Of a DNA stretch of 64,000 nt, positions 57,550-63,228 are shown one piece after another. The stretch spans positions 1,609,611 to 1,673,610 of the forward strand of contig JAWQFM010000006.1 in NCBI GenBank assembly GCA_033442325.1, in the 5' to 3' direction. The DNA is from Salpingoeca rosetta (taxonomy: Eukaryota; Protista; Choanoflagellata). A model generated the notes under the pieces. That model saw only the letters and a list, made by a program, of their open reading frames with translations. It did no database searches and had not been told where the DNA came from. How positions within the stretch are numbered: position 1 is the stretch's first letter; each line of letters opens with the position of its first letter. Position numbers and translations under genes: made by a program.

Positions 57550-57947
57550 TGTGTCTGTGTGTGTGTGTGTGTGTCTGTGTCTGTGTCTGTGTCTGTGTAT
57601 GTGTGTCTGTGTGTCTGTGTGTGTGTGTGTGTCTGAATGCTGCTGTGTTGACACATACATGCCTTGCTTGCCTCGTTTGTTTGGTTGTTACCCCCCTTCG
57701 CATCTGGTTTGCGCGTTACACTTTGGTGGTTGGTTGGGCTTTGGATATCGCTACCTGACTTGCTTTGGTTGTTGCGTCCATCATCCAACAAGAAACAACG
57801 GGACATTGGTGTGATGGTGAGAGGGATGGTGGGGTGGATGGTGGGGTGGAGGGATGGTTCATGAGAAGGGATTGGGGGGGGGGGTGGCAAAATGGAAACT
57901 TCGGGCCTCAAATTTTTTCCTGGAGATGAATCCTTCCCACGACCAAA

Positions 57948-58522
57948 ATGGATCGCTGTCCTGTCGTCCGGAATACGGCGCTGGTGCTGGCGATGCTGGT
58001 GGTGGTGCTGGCTTTGGGCGAACCAGTTCGACCTGCTCCTGATCACGCACGCTCTGTAGCAGTGCAGCACTTGCAGCTGGTGGACTTCTTCTCCCCAACA
58101 GCCACGACATGGACAACAACAGCAAGAACGACAACCAGTCCTTCCGATGGCAGTACTCCTCCACCACCTTCTCCTCTCAACCGGACAACCTTCTTTCAGG
58201 ACGTGTATCAGCACGACACGTTGATCGCACGGGATGCCACATCTGCACGCCTGCGATCCCTGACACGGCCACTCGGACAAGTGCAAGAGCTGTGCCACGC
58301 CTTTGAACAGCAGGCCCAACAGAGCGGCGGCTTCCATGTGAGTGACATGAACGTGAAATGCATGGCATCTTGGTGCCTGTCCTTCGCCTGTCTTGTCTGC
58401 TGCTGTTGTTCGTTCAGCGAGCAGAACCCTGGGTGTGGTGGGAGAAGGGCATTGGAGGAGAAGGTTGAGATGATGATCCCTTGCCTGCAAGCAAGCGTTG
58501 TCAGCTGCCTTGCCGCTTGCAG

Positions 58523-58560
<38 letters not shown>

Positions 58561-61500
58561 TCACGCGCACGCACGCACATTCACACAAACACGCACACGC
58601 ACACACGATCCACAGATCAAGGAGCAAGGCGAGACGCGGCAGGTGTCGTCGTGCAAGCAGATGGAGGACGAGCTGGCTGCCGGCGTGGGTTTGCTCATCC
58701 GCTACGAGGACCTCGTGGACTCCCCCGCCCAGGACCACGTCAAGCAGCTGCAGGACGGCGTGCGCGACGTGTTTGGCACAGAGTCCACGGTCCACCTGTA
58801 CCACGCCACGCAGAACGAGTCGCGCGCCCTCATGCCGCACACAGACCCCTACGACGTCCTTGTCATCCAGCTCCACGGCTCAAAGCGCTGGACAACCTGC
58901 ATTCCAGACGCATACGTCTCCGACACCGACACCAACAACGACGGAAGCGACACCAACGCGGTGGACGACAACAACACCAACACCGGCACTGGCGACCACG
59001 GTGCTTCTGCTTCTGCTTCGTCGTCGTCTTCCTTCCCAAACCACCATGACACACGCGTACGCCCAAGCGAGGCAGAGACCATCAAGCACTTCAACCCTGC
59101 GCGGCTGGGCCAGCTGCAGGAGATCCGGCGCCAGAGGCAGCAGGGGTGCACGCGCTACGAGGACGCAGACCTGCGTGGCATGCGCTGCAACGAGTTCACG
59201 CTGCGTGCCGGCGACACCATGTACATGCCCAAGGGCATCATCCACTTTGCGCTGTCGGGCGAGGAGGGCTCGTCGCATCTCACCATCTCGCTGGAGCGCA
59301 AGGGCCTGGCGTGGGCCGATGCGCTCATGCACGCGGCGCTCTCTGGCTCGGACATTGTGGACAACCCGGCGTTCCTTGGCCACTGGAAGAACACGGTGCA
59401 GTCGCTCATCAGCGACTACCGCGGCGTGCAGCTGCTGGAGGCCATGCCATCCTGGCACCTCAACACGGGTGCGCTGTGTGCAGCGCGTGGACAGGAACAA
59501 CAACAACAACAGCTGCTGCTGCTGCAGCAGCACGGCGATGGCAGTGCAACTGGCGGCGAGCGGGATGAGGTGAAGGCGTTTGTGGCGTCGTTCCAGTCGC
59601 TGTGCCGCGAGGTTGGACCCGATGTGCTTGAGACGTACACCAAGGCGAACGATGTGGACGCGTTCCTGAATGCAGACGGCATTGGCGCGCTTGTTGAGCG
59701 CGTGTGCAGCGAAGAGTCGGCCGCCGCTGTTGTGGAGCAGCTGTGCGCACGCGGCAAAATGCCTGTGGACGTGACGTCACCATTGTTTCGCATCCAGGCC
59801 CCCAGAGTGAGTTGCCAACGCTTTGTTGTTGTGTTTGTTCAGTTTCATGGTGGTTTCACGCAAGCAACGCGCTTCTTGCTTGCCAGCCGCTAACACACAC
59901 ACACGCACAATCATCATGACAGGAGCGTCGGAGGAGGAATACTGTGACAGCATCGTACACGTGTGATTCAAGCTGCGATACGGGCTGCGATGGGTGAGTT
60001 TGTTGTGAAGTTGCACAATGTGTTTTCCAACCCAGCCACCACAACGGCTCAAGGCACTACAGGCCCTAGTGAAGCTAGGTCTTGCTCGGTCTCGAAAACG
60101 TGATGCTCCTGATGCTCGTATTTCTTGCTCGTGCTTGTGGACGCAGGCAAGCATGCTCTGGCTGCGACGACAACTGCAACGCAGGCTGTAAGTGACAGTA
60201 AAAGCCATGGGCGCATGCAGCAATGAGGATAGGTGTGCTTGGAAGCCCATTTCTTCTCACAGCTGTTGCTCCTGGTGCACTGTGCATGACGAACAACCAG
60301 GCGACGATGACTGCAACGAATGCGATGCAAGCTGTGACGGCTGCAACGACCAGTCGTAAGCGAGAGCTGCTGTGTTGGCGCGTGGACGTACCTTGCATTT
60401 CTGGTGGTTAGGTGCGATGATTGCACGCATTGCAAATTTACGCTGCTCTGGATTGGATGTATGCAGGTGCACAGGATCATGCGATGAGAGCTGCGACAGA
60501 TGCCTCGGCTCGTGTGACACCAGTTGTGACGCAGTCACTGGTTGCCCATTGTGAGTGACCGTGTGTGCTCTTGCTGTTCATGTGTTATGTCCTTGGAGCG
60601 TGCCTTCCTGAGCGGCCTCCCTCCCCATCGTTTATAACTGGAGAACTAGTTCTTCACACTCTCCACTTCAATCACAGTCTCGCTCACTTTCAAACTTGTC
60701 TGTGATGTGACGCAACACGAATGCACTGTCTTTTCTACCCAGTTTCTATTTTGTGTTGTCCGACCCCGACTGCCAATGTAAGAAGAACACCCATGCGTGT
60801 CATGTGTAACATAACAACTGTAATGTAACAACATCACAAATTATTGATTGCGTGTTTCCTATGTGCATGCGCGGACTTGTGTGGACTCTCCCCACCTCTG
60901 TTCTCACGTGCTGCCATTACACACACCCACGCACATCCCGGCTCAACTCGACAGCAAGCTGCGACGACTCATGCGACAGCAACTGCAACGCTGGTCAGTC
61001 ACATCAGTGTCAATGTCTCATATTGCATGGCAAGTGTAGAAGTGTTGCGTTGGCTTGCCGTCATGTTGATGCTCTTGGCACTTTCCTGGTCGTGTGTACA
61101 AGCGCACTTTATCGTCACTCATCGCCACTCATCGCCACTCTTCGCCATGTCATTGCATGCTAACGCCCCTTCTTGTGTGTCGCAGATTGTAACGCTGGAT
61201 GCGACAGCAGCTGCACCCCCACGGGCTGCAACTTCAACTGCGACAGCTCCTGTGATGGGCCGTGTGACGCGTACGTGTCGTGCACACTACTATGTTATTT
61301 TGCTACATGCGCGCATAATCGCTCAACCCAGCAACCCTCTGCTGAACTCTCGCGTGCTTCTCATCTTCGCCGTTCGCCCTCATAACCTATTCCCTTTGCA
61401 TCTCCATTGTCCATCTTGAACTCAATACAGTGGCTGTGACGACAACTGCAACACAAGTTGTGATGAGTGCACATACAGCAGCTGTGACAGTTCATGTGAC

Positions 61501-61872
61501 GACTCGTGCTCGTGCAACCCTGGCTTCAATGGAACTGGCACACTGTGCTCTGCGTGTGCGTCCAACACGTACAGCGCCAGCAGAAACCAGACGACGTGCA
61601 CGCAGTGCGAGGCATGCCCCGTTGGCAAGTATCGCTCTGGGTGTGGCGGGTCGAGCCCTGGCTCGTGCCTGGGCGTAAATTGCACAGCCCCTGTCATCGA
61701 GCATGCGGTGTTAAGCTTCAACTCCACCCGATACCCTGCGACGGCAATCGTGTCGTGTGAAGAAGGATATGAGCTGACTGGCGCTTCGTCCTTGACGTGC
61801 CAAGCAGATGGCAGCTGGGGCGATCTACCGTTGTGTGTGGTGCTCGAAACAACAACGACAACGACGCTGATG

Positions 61873-61912
<40 letters not shown>

Positions 61913-61913
61913 G

Positions 61914-61974
<61 letters not shown>

Positions 61975-63228
61975 GCAGCAGCAGCAGCAGAGGTAGTGCC
62001 AACACTCACCTCGGATGATACACCGCCACTGGAACCTGCAACAGGAACAATCCAGTCATCATCAGCATCACAAACTTTCCCCTCTCTTCCTTCATCGATG
62101 CCCGCCTCTCCCTTATCTTCCTCTTCAACCCCAGGACACGCTGAGGCGTCGCCAGCTGGAAGCAGTTCAACGTACGCTTTCCTCCTTGTTTGTGTGTCTG
62201 TGCTTTGTCGCCATTGCACTCCATGCGCATTGAAGGACCACCTCCTTCTGACCGCTGTCAATTGCACTCTTTCTTGTTCCTTACTGTAGAACATCGGCGT
62301 CGTGGCAGCTTGGAGTGGGCATTGGCGCTGCTGCCTTCTTTGTTGTCCTCATTGCTGTGATCCTCGTCGTTCTTCGAAAGCGAAAGAGTCGCATCTCTCT
62401 TCACCACGTCAGTGACTTGATGCAACACACCTGCGCCGTCCTTGCATGTCGTTCCTTGAAGCTGCTCGTACGCCGCGGTAGCCCTTCAGTCATTCACAAG
62501 CATCATTTCTCACATGTCCCTCCTTATGTGTGCGCTTGATATGTTAAGGACGGGTCTCCAAGCGAAACAATGGCTCAAACACGTACTGGTATGCGTATAC
62601 CATGGTGTCATGTCAAAGCAAGATTTGAACACTGTCACTACATGTCTTGAATTCGCTCTCACTTCTTCATCGTCGATTCTGACCTTGCGCATGTGCAGGT
62701 ATTGGAATGTATGCCAACCCCATGTATGAGCCGGCTGACGACGGAAACCACCAAGCTTCCGCAACACCAGCAGCAACACCACAACACACTCACGATCCAA
62801 CGTACGAAAGCATTGATACTGGTACGCAGAGTACATGCGTTGCACCACGCCCAGCCACTCAAGCACAACGCCCACCCCATCGTCAGCTGGCAGCGCGTGG
62901 ACTGCCACCACCACCGCCTGGATTACCACAACCGCCTGGACTGCCACCACCTGGACTGCCACCACCACCCCATCAGACACCAACACCCCCACAGCCTGAT
63001 TCCGTGTATGCTCACATTGGCGACGCGGAAGCGAGTGGCGGCACACCACACCACAGGCACAGGTGGGATCCGGACACTTACGACACAGCAAACGGTGGCG
63101 GTGATCACACACCGCGTGCAAGGCACGCGTGGGATTCTGATGTTTATGACACGCAGCCTCAGCACACCCCCAGCAGAGTGTGTGCTGGACATGTGTGGGA
63201 CGCTGACGTGTATGATGTTTCAGCCTGA
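57948..63228 (+). CDS. Type I membrane protein: signal peptide - JmjC (cupin_4/ROX-like) 2OG-Fe oxygenase - RRRR - C[D/N]xx repeat array - EGF/GCC-like - Sushi - Thr mucin - TM - NPxY/Pro/Tyr tail
   Basis: Signal peptide ALVLAMLVVVLALG. HLYHAT..PHTDPYDVLVIQLHGSKRW..LRAGDTMYMPKGIIHFA..SSHLTIS. Then ERRRRN and seven phase-consistent small exons of CDSSCD-type repeats. Sushi CEEGYELTGASSLTCQADGSWGDLPLC. TM GVGIGAAAFFVVLIAVILVVL-RKRK. YANPMY. Stop at 63228. Confidence 0.85.
61850..61990 (+). repeat. Coding (ACA)n/(GCA)n tract encoding the poly-Thr mucin stalk
   Basis: In frame with the Sushi exon of the JmjC receptor. Confidence 0.85.

What the first reader, a model, noticed from the sequence alone, without database searches (positions are those of the whole stretch)
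57948..63228. Cell-surface receptor carrying its own extracellular JmjC hydroxylase as a furin-cleavable pro-domain ahead of an Asp/Asn-Cys array
Seen: a signal peptide, then a cupin_4/ROX-type JmjC domain with an intact Fe triad (H-T-D at 58838-58846, distal H at 59243-59245) and the 2OG-binding GSKRW Lys. Immediately after come APR|ERRRR/N (polybasic convertase site), ~170 aa of C-[D/N]-x-x repeats, EGF/GCC-like, Sushi, mucin, TM and a signalling tail. Known: ROX-family JmjC enzymes (NO66, MINA53, YcfD) are intracellular protein beta-hydroxylases; the lumenal Asp/Asn hydroxylase of EGF domains (AspH) is a separate enzyme of a different 2OG subfamily. Inference: this may be a self-modifying precursor whose N-terminal oxygenase hydroxylates Asp/Asn of its own repeat array in the secretory pathway and is then cut off (enzyme-substrate fusion logic). 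That would leave a hydroxy-Asp-rich Ca/metal-binding or adhesive ectodomain, possibly O2/Fe-sensitive. I know of no characterised protein with this architecture.
Basis: partly seen in the sequence, partly recalled or inferred. Interest (0 to 1): 0.88.

Follow-up and report, generated by a model that had tools for sequence, protein, structure and literature searches.

The report
Surface receptor with outward-facing JmjC oxygenase
This Salpingoeca rosetta gene can encode a membrane receptor whose outer tip is an apparently working iron/2-oxoglutarate oxygenase followed by a protease cut site and a cysteine-aspartate domain. This protein type was predicted by computer for Monosiga in 2010 and has never been tested, and the RNA data available for this copy mainly show a shorter message without the enzyme.

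Summary
With 12 GT-AG introns, 57948-63228 gives one open 1,139-aa frame. It encodes a signal peptide, a MINA53/NO66-type JmjC domain with an intact Fe triad and 2OG lysine, and ERRRR|N. After that come a 152-aa Cys-Asp/Asn domain, a TNFR/ephrin-like module, Sushi, a poly-Thr stalk, a TM and a Tyr/Pro-rich tail. One 35-nt micro-exon (60743-60777) is needed to keep the frame.

The layout is a family trait. S. rosetta has at least 11 paralogous loci. Complete transcriptome ORFs from three other choanoflagellate genera, and a 5'-truncated one from a fourth, carry it too.

It is not new in kind. Iyer et al. 2010 (PMC2938197) described receptor-like Monosiga proteins with extracellular MINA/NO66 JmjC domains and proposed surface hydroxylation or redox sensing. 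This scan has already followed up paralogs elsewhere in this genome. The conserved RxKR site and the Cys-Asp domain beside the enzyme are small additions.

RNA reads confirm only the five 3' introns at this locus. Reads on the JmjC exon come from paralogs. Sense-strand coverage starts near 60.75-60.87 kb, which suggests an internal promoter. The fused mRNA here is inferred from exon conservation, not seen. Self-hydroxylation followed by cleavage remains untested speculation.

The parts
57948..58337 (+). Exon 1: signal peptide (aa 1-24, 57948-58019), Thr/Pro-rich linker and the N-terminal strands of the JmjC fold (FFQDVYQHDTLI...)
   Evidence: ATG-initiated ORF and GTGAGT donor. The hydrophobic score is 3.57. 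An RNA-type contig of run X4 covers 57643-58337 with no differences and stops exactly at the donor. The N-terminal motif is shared with Hartaetosiga and S. infusionum ORFs.
58616..59806 (+). Exon 2: JmjC_2 (MINA53/NO66-type) oxygenase core plus helical extension. HTD at 58838-58846, 2OG Lys in GSKRW at 58877-58891, distal His at 59243-59245, PVDVTS at 59762-59779.
   Evidence: Pfam PF08007, 58.5 bits. The best PDB sequence hits are MINA53 and NO66, aligned over HxD, K and H. Foldseek's top hits are NO66, MINA53 and YxbC. H75, D77, K90, H210 and three Cys are invariant in 27 homologs. dN/dS against paralogs is 0.2-0.5.
59923..59993 (+). Exon 3: ERRRR|N convertase-type motif (Arg codons 59926-59937), TVTASYTC, and the first Cys-Asp units
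   Evidence: Translation. It is 93% identical with no gaps to paralog L015, whereas most flanking introns are 52-79%. The homologous exon in every paralog starts with ERVRR, RQKR or RTRR. The same site is seen in other genera (alignment).
60147..60187 (+). Exon 4, Cys-Asp/Asn micro-exon
   Evidence: GT-AG sites and open frame. 85% identical and gap-free against L015.
60301..60355 (+). Exon 5, Cys-Asp/Asn micro-exon
   Evidence: GT-AG sites and open frame. 91% identical and gap-free against L015.
60467..60550 (+). Exon 6, Cys-Asp/Asn micro-exon
   Evidence: GT-AG sites and open frame. 89% DNA identity and 96% protein identity to L015.
60743..60777 (+). Exon 7: 35-nt micro-exon (FFYFVLSDPDCQ), the aromatic break inside the array, needed to keep the frame
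   Evidence: Acceptor TTTTCTACCCAG and donor GTAAGA. It restores the reading phase. L015 has a longer aromatic exon in the same phase with the same 3' end. The motif matches the conserved SCDF[FL]x[FW]SCDSSC of the family. No RNA support.
60955..60993 (+). Exon 8, Cys-Asp/Asn micro-exon. RNA coverage runs on unspliced for about 80-100 nt upstream of it.
   Evidence: Its donor is confirmed by RNA joints in three runs. 95% identical to L015. Depth analysis of bins 60555-61145.
61186..61270 (+). Exon 9, Cys-Asp/Asn units
   Evidence: Both flanking introns are confirmed by RNA joints. 96% identical to L015.
61431..62171 (+). Exon 10: end of the array (to 61515), TNFR/ephrin-receptor-like Cys module (61507-61668), Sushi (61675-61839) and the poly-Thr/Ser mucin stalk
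   Evidence: RNA joints on both sides. Sushi scores 39.3 bits. Ephrin_rec_like and TNFR_c6 match below cut-off. Coordinates.
62290..62407 (+). Exon 11: transmembrane helix (62303-62374) and the RKRK stop-transfer motif
   Evidence: RNA joints and hydropathy.
62549..62588 (+). Exon 12, cytoplasmic linker
   Evidence: RNA joints on both sides.
62699..63228 (+). Exon 13: cytoplasmic tail with NPMY (62716-62727), YESI, YAHI, three D-x-Y-D motifs and a PPPPGLP proline run, then the stop codon
   Evidence: Translation. This part has the highest RNA depth. NPxY tails are also found in the Hartaetosiga, S. infusionum and Microstomoeca ORFs.

Best explanation
The locus is one more member of the choanoflagellate family of type I receptor-like glycoproteins with an extracellular MINA53/NO66-clade JmjC domain.

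Shown by sequence:
- The frame is a 13-exon, 1,139-aa ORF.
- In order it carries a signal peptide, a JmjC domain with an intact Fe(II) triad and 2OG lysine, a helical extension and an R-R-R-R motif.
- After the motif come a 152-aa conserved Cys-Asp/Asn domain, a TNFR/ephrin-like module, Sushi, a Thr-rich stalk, a TM and a 200-aa tail with NPxY, YxxI and proline motifs.

Inferred mechanism:
- The oxygenase folds in the ER or Golgi, stabilised by the family's invariant cysteines. There it hydroxylates protein side chains using O2, Fe(II) and 2OG. Its target may be its own neighbouring Cys-Asp/Asn domain or other surface proteins.
- A kexin/furin-type convertase probably cuts after RRRR.
- The tail connects to phosphotyrosine and endocytic adaptors.

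Specific to this copy:
- It is a recombinant. The 5' part, up to 59781, is 95% like a paralog 180 kb upstream. From 59782 on it is like a chromosome-21 paralog.
- In the RNA runs examined it is expressed mainly as a 5'-truncated message that starts near 60.75-60.87 kb and lacks the enzyme.
For: Gene model and domains:
- The frame is open across 12 canonical introns.
- Pfam JmjC_2 and Sushi match above cut-off.
- MINA53 and NO66 are the nearest solved sequences and folds.
- The AF2 model has pLDDT 83.9, with a DSBH core and an all-helical C-terminal part.
- H75, D77, K90, H210 and C95, C178, C191 are invariant in 27 homologs.

Family evidence:
- At least 11 paralogous loci have the same exon order, and each has a basic site at the start of exon 3.
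- PTSG_08991 and PTSG_11500 are fused gene models.
- Transcriptome ORFs marked complete from Hartaetosiga, S. infusionum, Microstomoeca and Choanoeca show JmjC, RxKR, Cys-Asp domain, GCC and Sushi modules, TM and tail in one ORF. The Microstomoeca ORF starts inside the JmjC domain.
- Micro-exons are 85-96% identical and gap-free against paralog L015, while most introns are 52-79% with many gaps.
- Purifying selection acts on the JmjC exon.
- P-domain convertases are present in the genome.

RNA and prior description:
- RNA joints confirm the five 3' introns.
- An exon 1 contig ends at the donor.
- The family was described earlier by Iyer et al. 2010.
Against: - No RNA joint was seen for introns 1-7 at this locus.
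- At positions where this copy differs from all paralogs, at most one read in two raw RNA runs carries its letter: for example 0/50, 0/73, 0/40 and 0/48 in X22, and one of six at 59103 in X21.
- Sense-strand depth is about 0 over 59964-60751, against 9-18 on exons 9-10.
- No enzyme activity, cleavage or modification has been measured for any family member.
- No winged-helix domain was evident in the model.
- The array has no confident predicted fold.
- The array lacks His, the residue hydroxylated by NO66 and MINA53.
Confidence: 0.7

Rival explanations
1. At this locus the enzyme and the receptor are in practice separate products. An internal, possibly bidirectional, promoter at about 60.70-60.87 kb drives a short mRNA covering exon 8 onward. 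The upstream promoter gives little or no full-length mRNA, so the working receptor here lacks the JmjC head.
For: - Sense-strand depth is about 0 at 60555-60751, then 2.6-5.9 at 60752-60948. That is unspliced coverage, because the exon content of the bin is too small to explain it.
- No 60777>60955 joint is listed, although exon 8 depth is 6-12.
- Exon 6 is at least 8-fold less covered than exon 8.
- JmjC-exon reads come from the C29 paralogs.
- An antisense, minus-strand-spliced contig spans 59734-60706, and plus-first-mate reads lie in the same place.
- An in-frame ATG sits at 60861.
Against: - Exons 3-6 have no start codon or signal peptide of their own, yet they are conserved as coding, gap-free and with splice sites kept, against a paralog at dS about 0.45.
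- The N-terminus of the short ORF (MCMRGLVW...) is weakly hydrophobic, 1.51 against 3.57. The corresponding ATG in L015 is out of frame.
- Exon 1 is expressed and spliced in run X4.
- Only two raw runs from one study were read, and 26% of each.
Confidence: 0.3
2. The JmjC domain stays on the receptor and works as a sensor of O2, Fe, 2OG or redox state. It would act by autohydroxylation or by ligand-dependent conformational change that signals through the Tyr-rich tail. It is not a processing enzyme that is then discarded.
For: - Iyer et al. 2010 proposed this for the Monosiga proteins.
- The tail carries conserved NPxY and other Tyr motifs.
- The cofactor residues are invariant.
Against: A conserved RxKR motif directly after the domain in most members would separate the sensor from the tail unless the fragments stay associated. 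Free Fe(II) and 2OG are scarce in sea water, which favours action inside the secretory pathway (general knowledge).
Confidence: 0.2
3. The oxygenase acts in trans on other secreted or surface proteins, as P4H, leprecan and AspH do. The Cys-Asp/Asn domain is then a disulfide-rich, calcium-binding structural spacer and not the substrate.
For: - Iyer et al. suggested modification of cell-surface proteins in general.
- The array aligns over its length with 17 invariant positions across genera. That fits a folded domain better than a substrate polymer.
- The array lacks His and almost lacks Arg, the known ROX target residues.
Against: - The array sits directly after the enzyme in nearly all members examined.
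- Among the first 100 of 256 pattern hits listed (contigs C1-C14), dense C[DN]xxC clusters in the genome lie only at JmjC loci.
- That adjacency fits a cis relationship at least as well as a trans one.
Confidence: 0.3

Closest known systems
Receptor-like proteins with extracellular MINA/NO66-clade JmjC domains in Monosiga brevicollis (Iyer, Abhiman, de Souza, Aravind 2010, NAR 38:5261, PMC2938197)
   Same: Signal peptide and an extracellular JmjC of the MINA/NO66 clade, joined to Cys-rich GCC-type and Sushi modules in a membrane receptor. A lineage-specific expansion. The same proposed roles, surface hydroxylase or redox sensor. Monosiga proteins A9V8E8, A9V0X5 and A9V2P6 are direct sequence hits.
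   Different: This is an S. rosetta member with a short ectodomain (one Sushi) and no SH2 or kinase. Its tail carries only Tyr and Pro motifs. The paper does not mention the conserved RxKR site or the Cys-Asp/Asn domain next to the enzyme, although its unnamed 'MSD' Cys domains may include the latter.
Human MINA53 (RIOX2) and NO66 (RIOX1), bacterial YcfD and YxbC: ribosomal oxygenases
   Same: Pfam JmjC_2, the HxD...H triad, a Lys 15 residues after the first His, and a helical C-terminal extension. They are the nearest solved structures.
   Different: The ROX enzymes are cytosolic or nucleolar and hydroxylate His or Arg of ribosomal proteins. Here the domain follows a signal peptide, has three invariant Cys and a roughly 60-aa low-complexity insert (pLDDT below 50 at residues 102-144), and shows no evident winged-helix domain. 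Sequence identity to them is only 14-18%.
AspH (EGF-domain Asp/Asn beta-hydroxylase) and FIH
   Same: AspH is a lumenal 2OG oxygenase that hydroxylates Asp/Asn in Cys-rich extracellular modules. FIH is a JmjC enzyme that hydroxylates Asn, Asp and His.
   Different: The domain here belongs to a different oxygenase subfamily. No Pfam match other than JmjC_2 and Cupin_8 was found. The AspH substrate consensus C-x-[DN]-x4-[FY]-x-C is absent from the protein. AspH is a separate enzyme, not fused to its substrate.
JMJD8, and the 'secreted JMJD5-like family' of Iyer et al. 2010
   Same: JmjC-type domains that carry signal peptides and conserved disulfide cysteines, so they are placed in the secretory pathway (for the JMJD5-like family; JMJD8 from my own knowledge, not checked here).
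   Different: They belong to the FIH/JMJD5 clade, not the MINA/NO66 clade, and are stand-alone proteins without receptor modules.

Membership tests
MINA53/NO66 (ROX) clade of JmjC oxygenases, Pfam JmjC_2 PF08007 | Profile match above the curated cut-off | tested here: met
   58.5 bits against a cut-off of 22, E 6.5e-16, on exon 2
MINA53/NO66 (ROX) clade of JmjC oxygenases, Pfam JmjC_2 PF08007 | HxD...H Fe(II) triad and a 2OG-binding Lys 15 residues after the first His | tested here: met
   HTD, GSKRW and GIIH align to MINA53 PHYD, GEKHW and GTIH. The residues are invariant in 27 homologs.
MINA53/NO66 (ROX) clade of JmjC oxygenases, Pfam JmjC_2 PF08007 | Nearest solved folds are ROX enzymes | tested here: met
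   Foldseek ranks 1-33 are NO66, MINA53, YxbC (7zcc, 1vrb) and a YcfD-like enzyme, E down to 1.7e-8. TM-scores are only 0.30-0.35.
MINA53/NO66 (ROX) clade of JmjC oxygenases, Pfam JmjC_2 PF08007 | C-terminal helical dimerisation arm plus winged-helix domain | tested here: inconclusive
   The AF2 model is all-helical from residue 233 to 392 of exon 2, and no beta hairpin of a winged helix is seen. Dimerisation was not tested.
MINA53/NO66 (ROX) clade of JmjC oxygenases, Pfam JmjC_2 PF08007 | Hydroxylation of His or Arg in ribosomal proteins; intracellular location | not testable with these tools
   The signal peptide and single C-terminal TM predict an extracellular or lumenal domain, so the ribosomal role is unlikely.
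Choanoflagellate receptor-like extracellular JmjC proteins (Iyer et al. 2010) | Signal peptide followed by a MINA/NO66-clade JmjC domain in the ectodomain of a membrane protein | tested here: met
   Monosiga family members are direct hits.
Choanoflagellate receptor-like extracellular JmjC proteins (Iyer et al. 2010) | Combination with GCC2/3, Ig, disintegrin or Sushi modules | tested here: met
   Sushi is above cut-off. The GCC/ephrin-receptor-like module matches below cut-off.
Choanoflagellate receptor-like extracellular JmjC proteins (Iyer et al. 2010) | Intracellular SH2 or tyrosine kinase domain | tested here: not met
   The 173-aa exon-13 part of the 200-aa tail has no Pfam domain. The tail carries only NPxY, YxxI and PPxxP motifs. 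The transcriptome orthologs also have short NPxY tails, so this feature is not universal in the family.
Proprotein-convertase (kexin/furin) substrates | R-x-K/R-R motif in an exposed linker of a secretory protein, conserved among relatives | tested here: met
   RERRRR|N here. ERVRR, RQKR and RTRR in paralogs. KRQKR, RSRR, RERR and RARRR in other genera. Absent in P0054, and only KRR in Monosiga A9V8E8.
Proprotein-convertase (kexin/furin) substrates | A convertase is present in the organism, and cleavage is shown | tested here: inconclusive
   Four P_proprotein (PF01483) matches in the genome are above cut-off. Cleavage itself cannot be tested here.
AspH-type EGF Asp/Asn hydroxylation system | AspH-type oxygenase domain and the substrate consensus C-x-[DN]-x4-[FY]-x-C | tested here: not met
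   Only JmjC_2 and Cupin_8 match the enzyme. The consensus is absent from the 1,139-aa protein.

The most novel reading that the evidence does not exclude
The family is a cis enzyme-substrate precursor. In the secretory pathway the ROX-type JmjC head beta-hydroxylates Asp/Asn of the adjacent Cys-Asp/Asn domain of the same polypeptide, which would be a residue specificity new for this clade. A kexin/furin-type convertase then removes the head at the conserved RxKR site. What remains is a hydroxy-Asp/Asn-rich, calcium-binding module on the receptor, and its maturation would depend on O2 and iron supply.
Probability: 0.15. Interest if true: 0.8.

Novelty: new member of a known kind. Interest (0 to 1): 0.4.

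Why it matters
[quoted passage not shown] If the enzyme is active outside the cytosol, it would link oxygen and iron availability to the maturation or signalling of cell-surface proteins in choanoflagellates. It would also widen the known chemistry of the ribosomal-oxygenase clade.

This locus adds little in kind. It does give a compact member (1,139 aa, one Sushi) that suits experiments in S. rosetta, where genome editing exists (PMC7314544 came up; I did not read it). It is also a clear case of 'head swapping' between paralogs by recombination inside the conserved PVDVTS codons. It also warns that expression of individual copies cannot be read from short reads, because the JmjC exons are 94-96% identical at six other loci.

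Tried and rejected
- **Fold of the Cys-Asp/Asn domain.** AlphaFold2 on a nine-sequence alignment gave pLDDT 37, so there is no usable model and I ran no fold search on it.
- **ESM Atlas.** The look-up of the array found no usable feature hit, and all structure matches had TM below 0.32.
- **Pfam on the array.** It has no family for the array in five full-length homologs.
- **NCBI gene model for this locus.**
  - A search with the Sushi exon (135-430 aa range) found nothing.
  - A search with exon 2 (218-695 aa) found no S. rosetta protein.
  - A search with PTSG_11500 (396-1,260 aa) found only PTSG_11500 and PTSG_08991, which map to other loci.
  - These blanks are limited by the tool's length window, so they say nothing about whether an annotation exists.
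- **Rejected: JmjC as a dead pseudo-enzyme.** The catalytic residues are invariant and dN/dS is 0.2-0.5.
- **Rejected: the 94-96% identical copies as a transposon.** Identity is confined to the coding exon, or to exon 1 through exon 2 in L002. It ends at the same codon in all copies, and every copy sits in the same gene structure.
- **Rejected as a start site: the signal-peptide-like ORF inside intron 8** (MASVEVLRWLAVMLMLLALSWSCVQA, about 61026). It is in another frame, and it is spliced out in all junction reads.
- **Run X1.** It behaves like genomic DNA, with contiguous coverage and no joints, so I did not use it as RNA evidence.

Full report
**What is in the sequence**

The window is eukaryotic, with GT-AG introns and (CA)n/(GT)n microsatellites. 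Database hits identify the genome as Salpingoeca rosetta: PTSG_11500 and PTSG_08991 are near-identical paralogs, and the assembly is 55.4 Mb.

Reading 57948-63228 with 12 canonical introns gives a 3,420-nt frame with a single terminal stop, so 1,139 aa. The exons are 57948-58337, 58616-59806, 59923-59993, 60147-60187, 60301-60355, 60467-60550, 60743-60777, 60955-60993, 61186-61270, 61431-62171, 62290-62407, 62549-62588 and 62699-63228. The 35-nt exon at 60743-60777 is needed to keep the frame. It has a strong acceptor and donor and encodes the aromatic break (FFYFVLSDPDCQ) that the family shows in the middle of its Cys-Asp domain.

Pfam gives JmjC_2 at 58.5 bits (cut-off 22) and Sushi at 39.3 bits. 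The module between the array and Sushi matches Ephrin_rec_like and TNFR_c6 only below cut-off.

Hydropathy shows only two hydrophobic segments, an N-terminal signal peptide and a TM at aa 916-939. The oxygenase is therefore lumenal or extracellular.

The array is 152 aa with 36 Cys, 31 Asp, 11 Asn, no His and one Arg. The Cys spacing is 4 in 24 of 35 intervals.

**Is the oxygenase real?**

- The nearest solved sequences are MINA53 and NO66. The HxD, the Lys 15 residues later and the distal His all align.
- An AlphaFold2 model of exon 2 (27-sequence alignment, pLDDT 83.9) has a double-stranded beta-helix core, a disordered low-complexity insert and an all-helical C-terminal part.
- Foldseek ranks NO66, MINA53, B. 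subtilis YxbC and YcfD-like enzymes first, although TM-scores are low at 0.30-0.35.
- In 27 homologs H75, D77, K90 and H210 are invariant. So are three cysteines, C95, C178 and C191, which fits disulfides in a secretory protein.
- Against paralogs the exon has dN/dS of 0.2-0.5.

A dead domain is therefore unlikely. Activity itself has not been tested.

**The architecture is a family trait**

The genome holds at least 11 loci with this JmjC exon and 38 JmjC_2 segment matches in all. In every paralog examined the JmjC exon ends about ten codons after PVDVTS. An intron follows, and the next exon begins with a basic site (ERVRR, RQKR, RTRR or ERRRR) followed by TVTxxYTC and Cys-Asp units.

The Broad gene models PTSG_08991 and PTSG_11500 splice exactly this way. 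Trinity/TransDecoder ORFs marked complete from Hartaetosiga balthica (3,090 aa), Salpingoeca infusionum (3,044 aa) and Choanoeca flexa (2,360 aa) carry the layout in a single ORF. So does one from Microstomoeca roanoka (2,799 aa), which begins inside the JmjC domain. Three Monosiga brevicollis proteins carry it as well. That layout is JmjC, RxKR-type site, Cys-Asp domain, GCC-type modules, Sushi, TM and a short tail with NPxY.

The Cys-Asp region aligns over its length between genera, with 17 invariant positions and a conserved SCDF[FL]x[FW]SCDSSCDSSC core. It therefore behaves as a domain, not as free low-complexity sequence. It has no Pfam family. Neither AlphaFold2 (pLDDT 37) nor the ESM Atlas gives it a fold.

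Four P-domain convertase matches in the genome make cleavage at RxKR plausible.

Among the first 100 of 256 genomic matches to a C[DN]xxC x3 DNA pattern (contigs C1-C14), dense clusters lie only at JmjC loci. The list was truncated, so this is only indicative.

**Prior knowledge**

Iyer, Abhiman, de Souza and Aravind (2010, PMC2938197) reported a Monosiga-specific expansion of the MINA/NO66 clade. They described it as receptor-like proteins with extracellular JmjC domains joined to GCC2/3, Ig, disintegrin or Sushi modules, with intracellular SH2 or kinase domains. They proposed either hydroxylation of cell-surface proteins or redox sensing through tyrosine phosphorylation.

I found no later paper on the subject. 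The paper does not mention the convertase motif or the Cys-Asp domain beside the enzyme. This scan has already followed up paralogous loci in this genome with the same conclusion.

**RNA evidence at this locus (one call allowed)**

Junction reads in two raw stranded RNA runs, and contigs of a third run, confirm introns 60994-61185, 61271-61430, 62172-62289, 62408-62548 and 62589-62698. No joint was listed for introns 1-7.

Reads laid on the JmjC exon carry about 40 consistent differences and diverge at 59778. Those letters are the ones of the chromosome-29 paralogs. At positions where this copy is unique (58686, 58903, 59103, 59605, 59713, 59764), 0 of 50, 73, 40, 48, 23 and 19 reads in run X22 show its letter. 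In X21 one read of six does, at 59103. This copy's JmjC exon is therefore at least 20-fold less represented than its own exons 9-10, which have depth 9-18.

Sense-strand depth is about 0 over 59964-60751. It resumes in 60752-60948 at a level that the 26 exonic bases in that bin cannot explain, and no 60777>60955 joint is seen. The simplest reading is an internal start site at about 60.75-60.87 kb.

A contig of run X4 spans 59734-60706 with a CT..AC joint, which is a minus-strand intron (60186-60391). Reads of opposite orientation in X22 lie in the same place. Together these suggest a divergent antisense transcript from the same region.

The short message has an in-frame ATG at 60861. The N-terminus it would encode is weakly hydrophobic (1.51 against 3.57), and the corresponding ATG is out of frame in the closest paralog.

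Against a simple 'two genes' reading:
- Exon 1 is present in run X4 as a contig with no differences that stops exactly at its donor.
- Exons 3-6, 8 and 9 are 85-96% identical and gap-free against paralog L015, whose synonymous divergence in the JmjC exon is 0.45. Most introns are 52-79% identical with many gaps.
- Those exons have no start or signal peptide of their own.

I conclude that the fused protein is what selection maintains. In the sampled conditions, however, this copy is expressed mostly as a truncated message. The fused mRNA of this copy remains unobserved.

**A locus-specific finding**

This copy is a mosaic. From 57981 to 59781 it is 95% identical to a paralog 180 kb upstream on the same contig (L002). 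From 59782 onward, covering the exon 2 tail, intron 2 and the micro-exons, it matches the chromosome-21 paralog L015 and not L002. The switch lies inside the conserved PVDVTS codons.

Six other loci share 94-96% identity over the JmjC exon alone, ending at the same base. The JmjC 'heads' are therefore being homogenised or swapped between receptors with different bodies.

**Mechanism and odds**

- Shown: the architecture, the topology, intact catalytic residues, the conserved basic motif and Cys-Asp domain, and membership of the family described in 2010.
- Inferred: oxygenase activity in the secretory pathway (about 0.6), convertase cleavage (about 0.5), and action on its own array (about 0.15-0.2).

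The array lacks His and nearly lacks Arg, which are the known ROX target residues. It also lacks the AspH consensus. Self-hydroxylation of Asp/Asn would therefore require a new specificity for this clade.

**Verdict**

This is a correct observation of an interesting but already predicted protein type, and a new member of a known kind. The added notes are the conserved cut site, the Cys-Asp domain, the mosaic origin of this copy, and an apparent internal promoter.

Noticed in passing
window 57981-59781 versus 59782-61300; loci L002, L015: This copy is a recombinant. Its 5' part is 95% identical to a paralog 180 kb upstream (G000:C6:1.488 Mb). From 59782 on it matches the C21 paralog. The switch lies inside the PVDVTS codons. 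Six other loci share 94-96% identity over the JmjC exon, and all end at 59781, which points to gene conversion or head swapping among receptors.
   Followed up: partly
window 59734-60706, minus strand: An RNA-type contig of run X4 is unspliced across sense introns 2 and 3 but has a CT..AC joint 60185>60392, which is a minus-strand GT-AG intron. Stranded reads of opposite orientation in X22 lie over 59964-60357. This is probably an antisense transcript, perhaps divergent from the internal promoter.
   Followed up: no
window about 60752-60870: Sense-strand RNA coverage starts abruptly here and runs unspliced into exon 8. This is a likely internal transcription start. The in-frame ATG at 60861 would give a 5'-truncated protein without a convincing signal peptide.
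   Followed up: partly
window 62716-62727 and the tails of P0010, P0011, P0014: An NPxY motif close to the membrane is conserved in the cytoplasmic tails of family members from four genera (NPMY, NPLY, NPTY). This suggests PTB-adaptor binding or endocytosis.
   Followed up: partly
G000:C29:524749-593819: Three JmjC-receptor paralogs, at about 541 kb, 559 kb and 593 kb, plus the strongest JmjC_2 hit of the genome (C29:524749, 82 bits), cluster within 70 kb. These copies supply most of the RNA reads that map to the JmjC exon of the window.
   Followed up: partly
window 61846-62001: The roughly 50-residue poly-Thr stalk is encoded by a near-perfect ACA/ACG trinucleotide run. Read-laying tools skip it as a repeat, so its length may be polymorphic.
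   Followed up: no
proteins P0054 (ENA contig of 86 kb) and P0043 (Logan): Proteins from unnamed environmental assemblies show the same JmjC plus Cys-Asp domain layout. P0054 lacks the RxKR motif. Their taxonomy is unknown, so the family may reach beyond cultured choanoflagellates.
   Followed up: no
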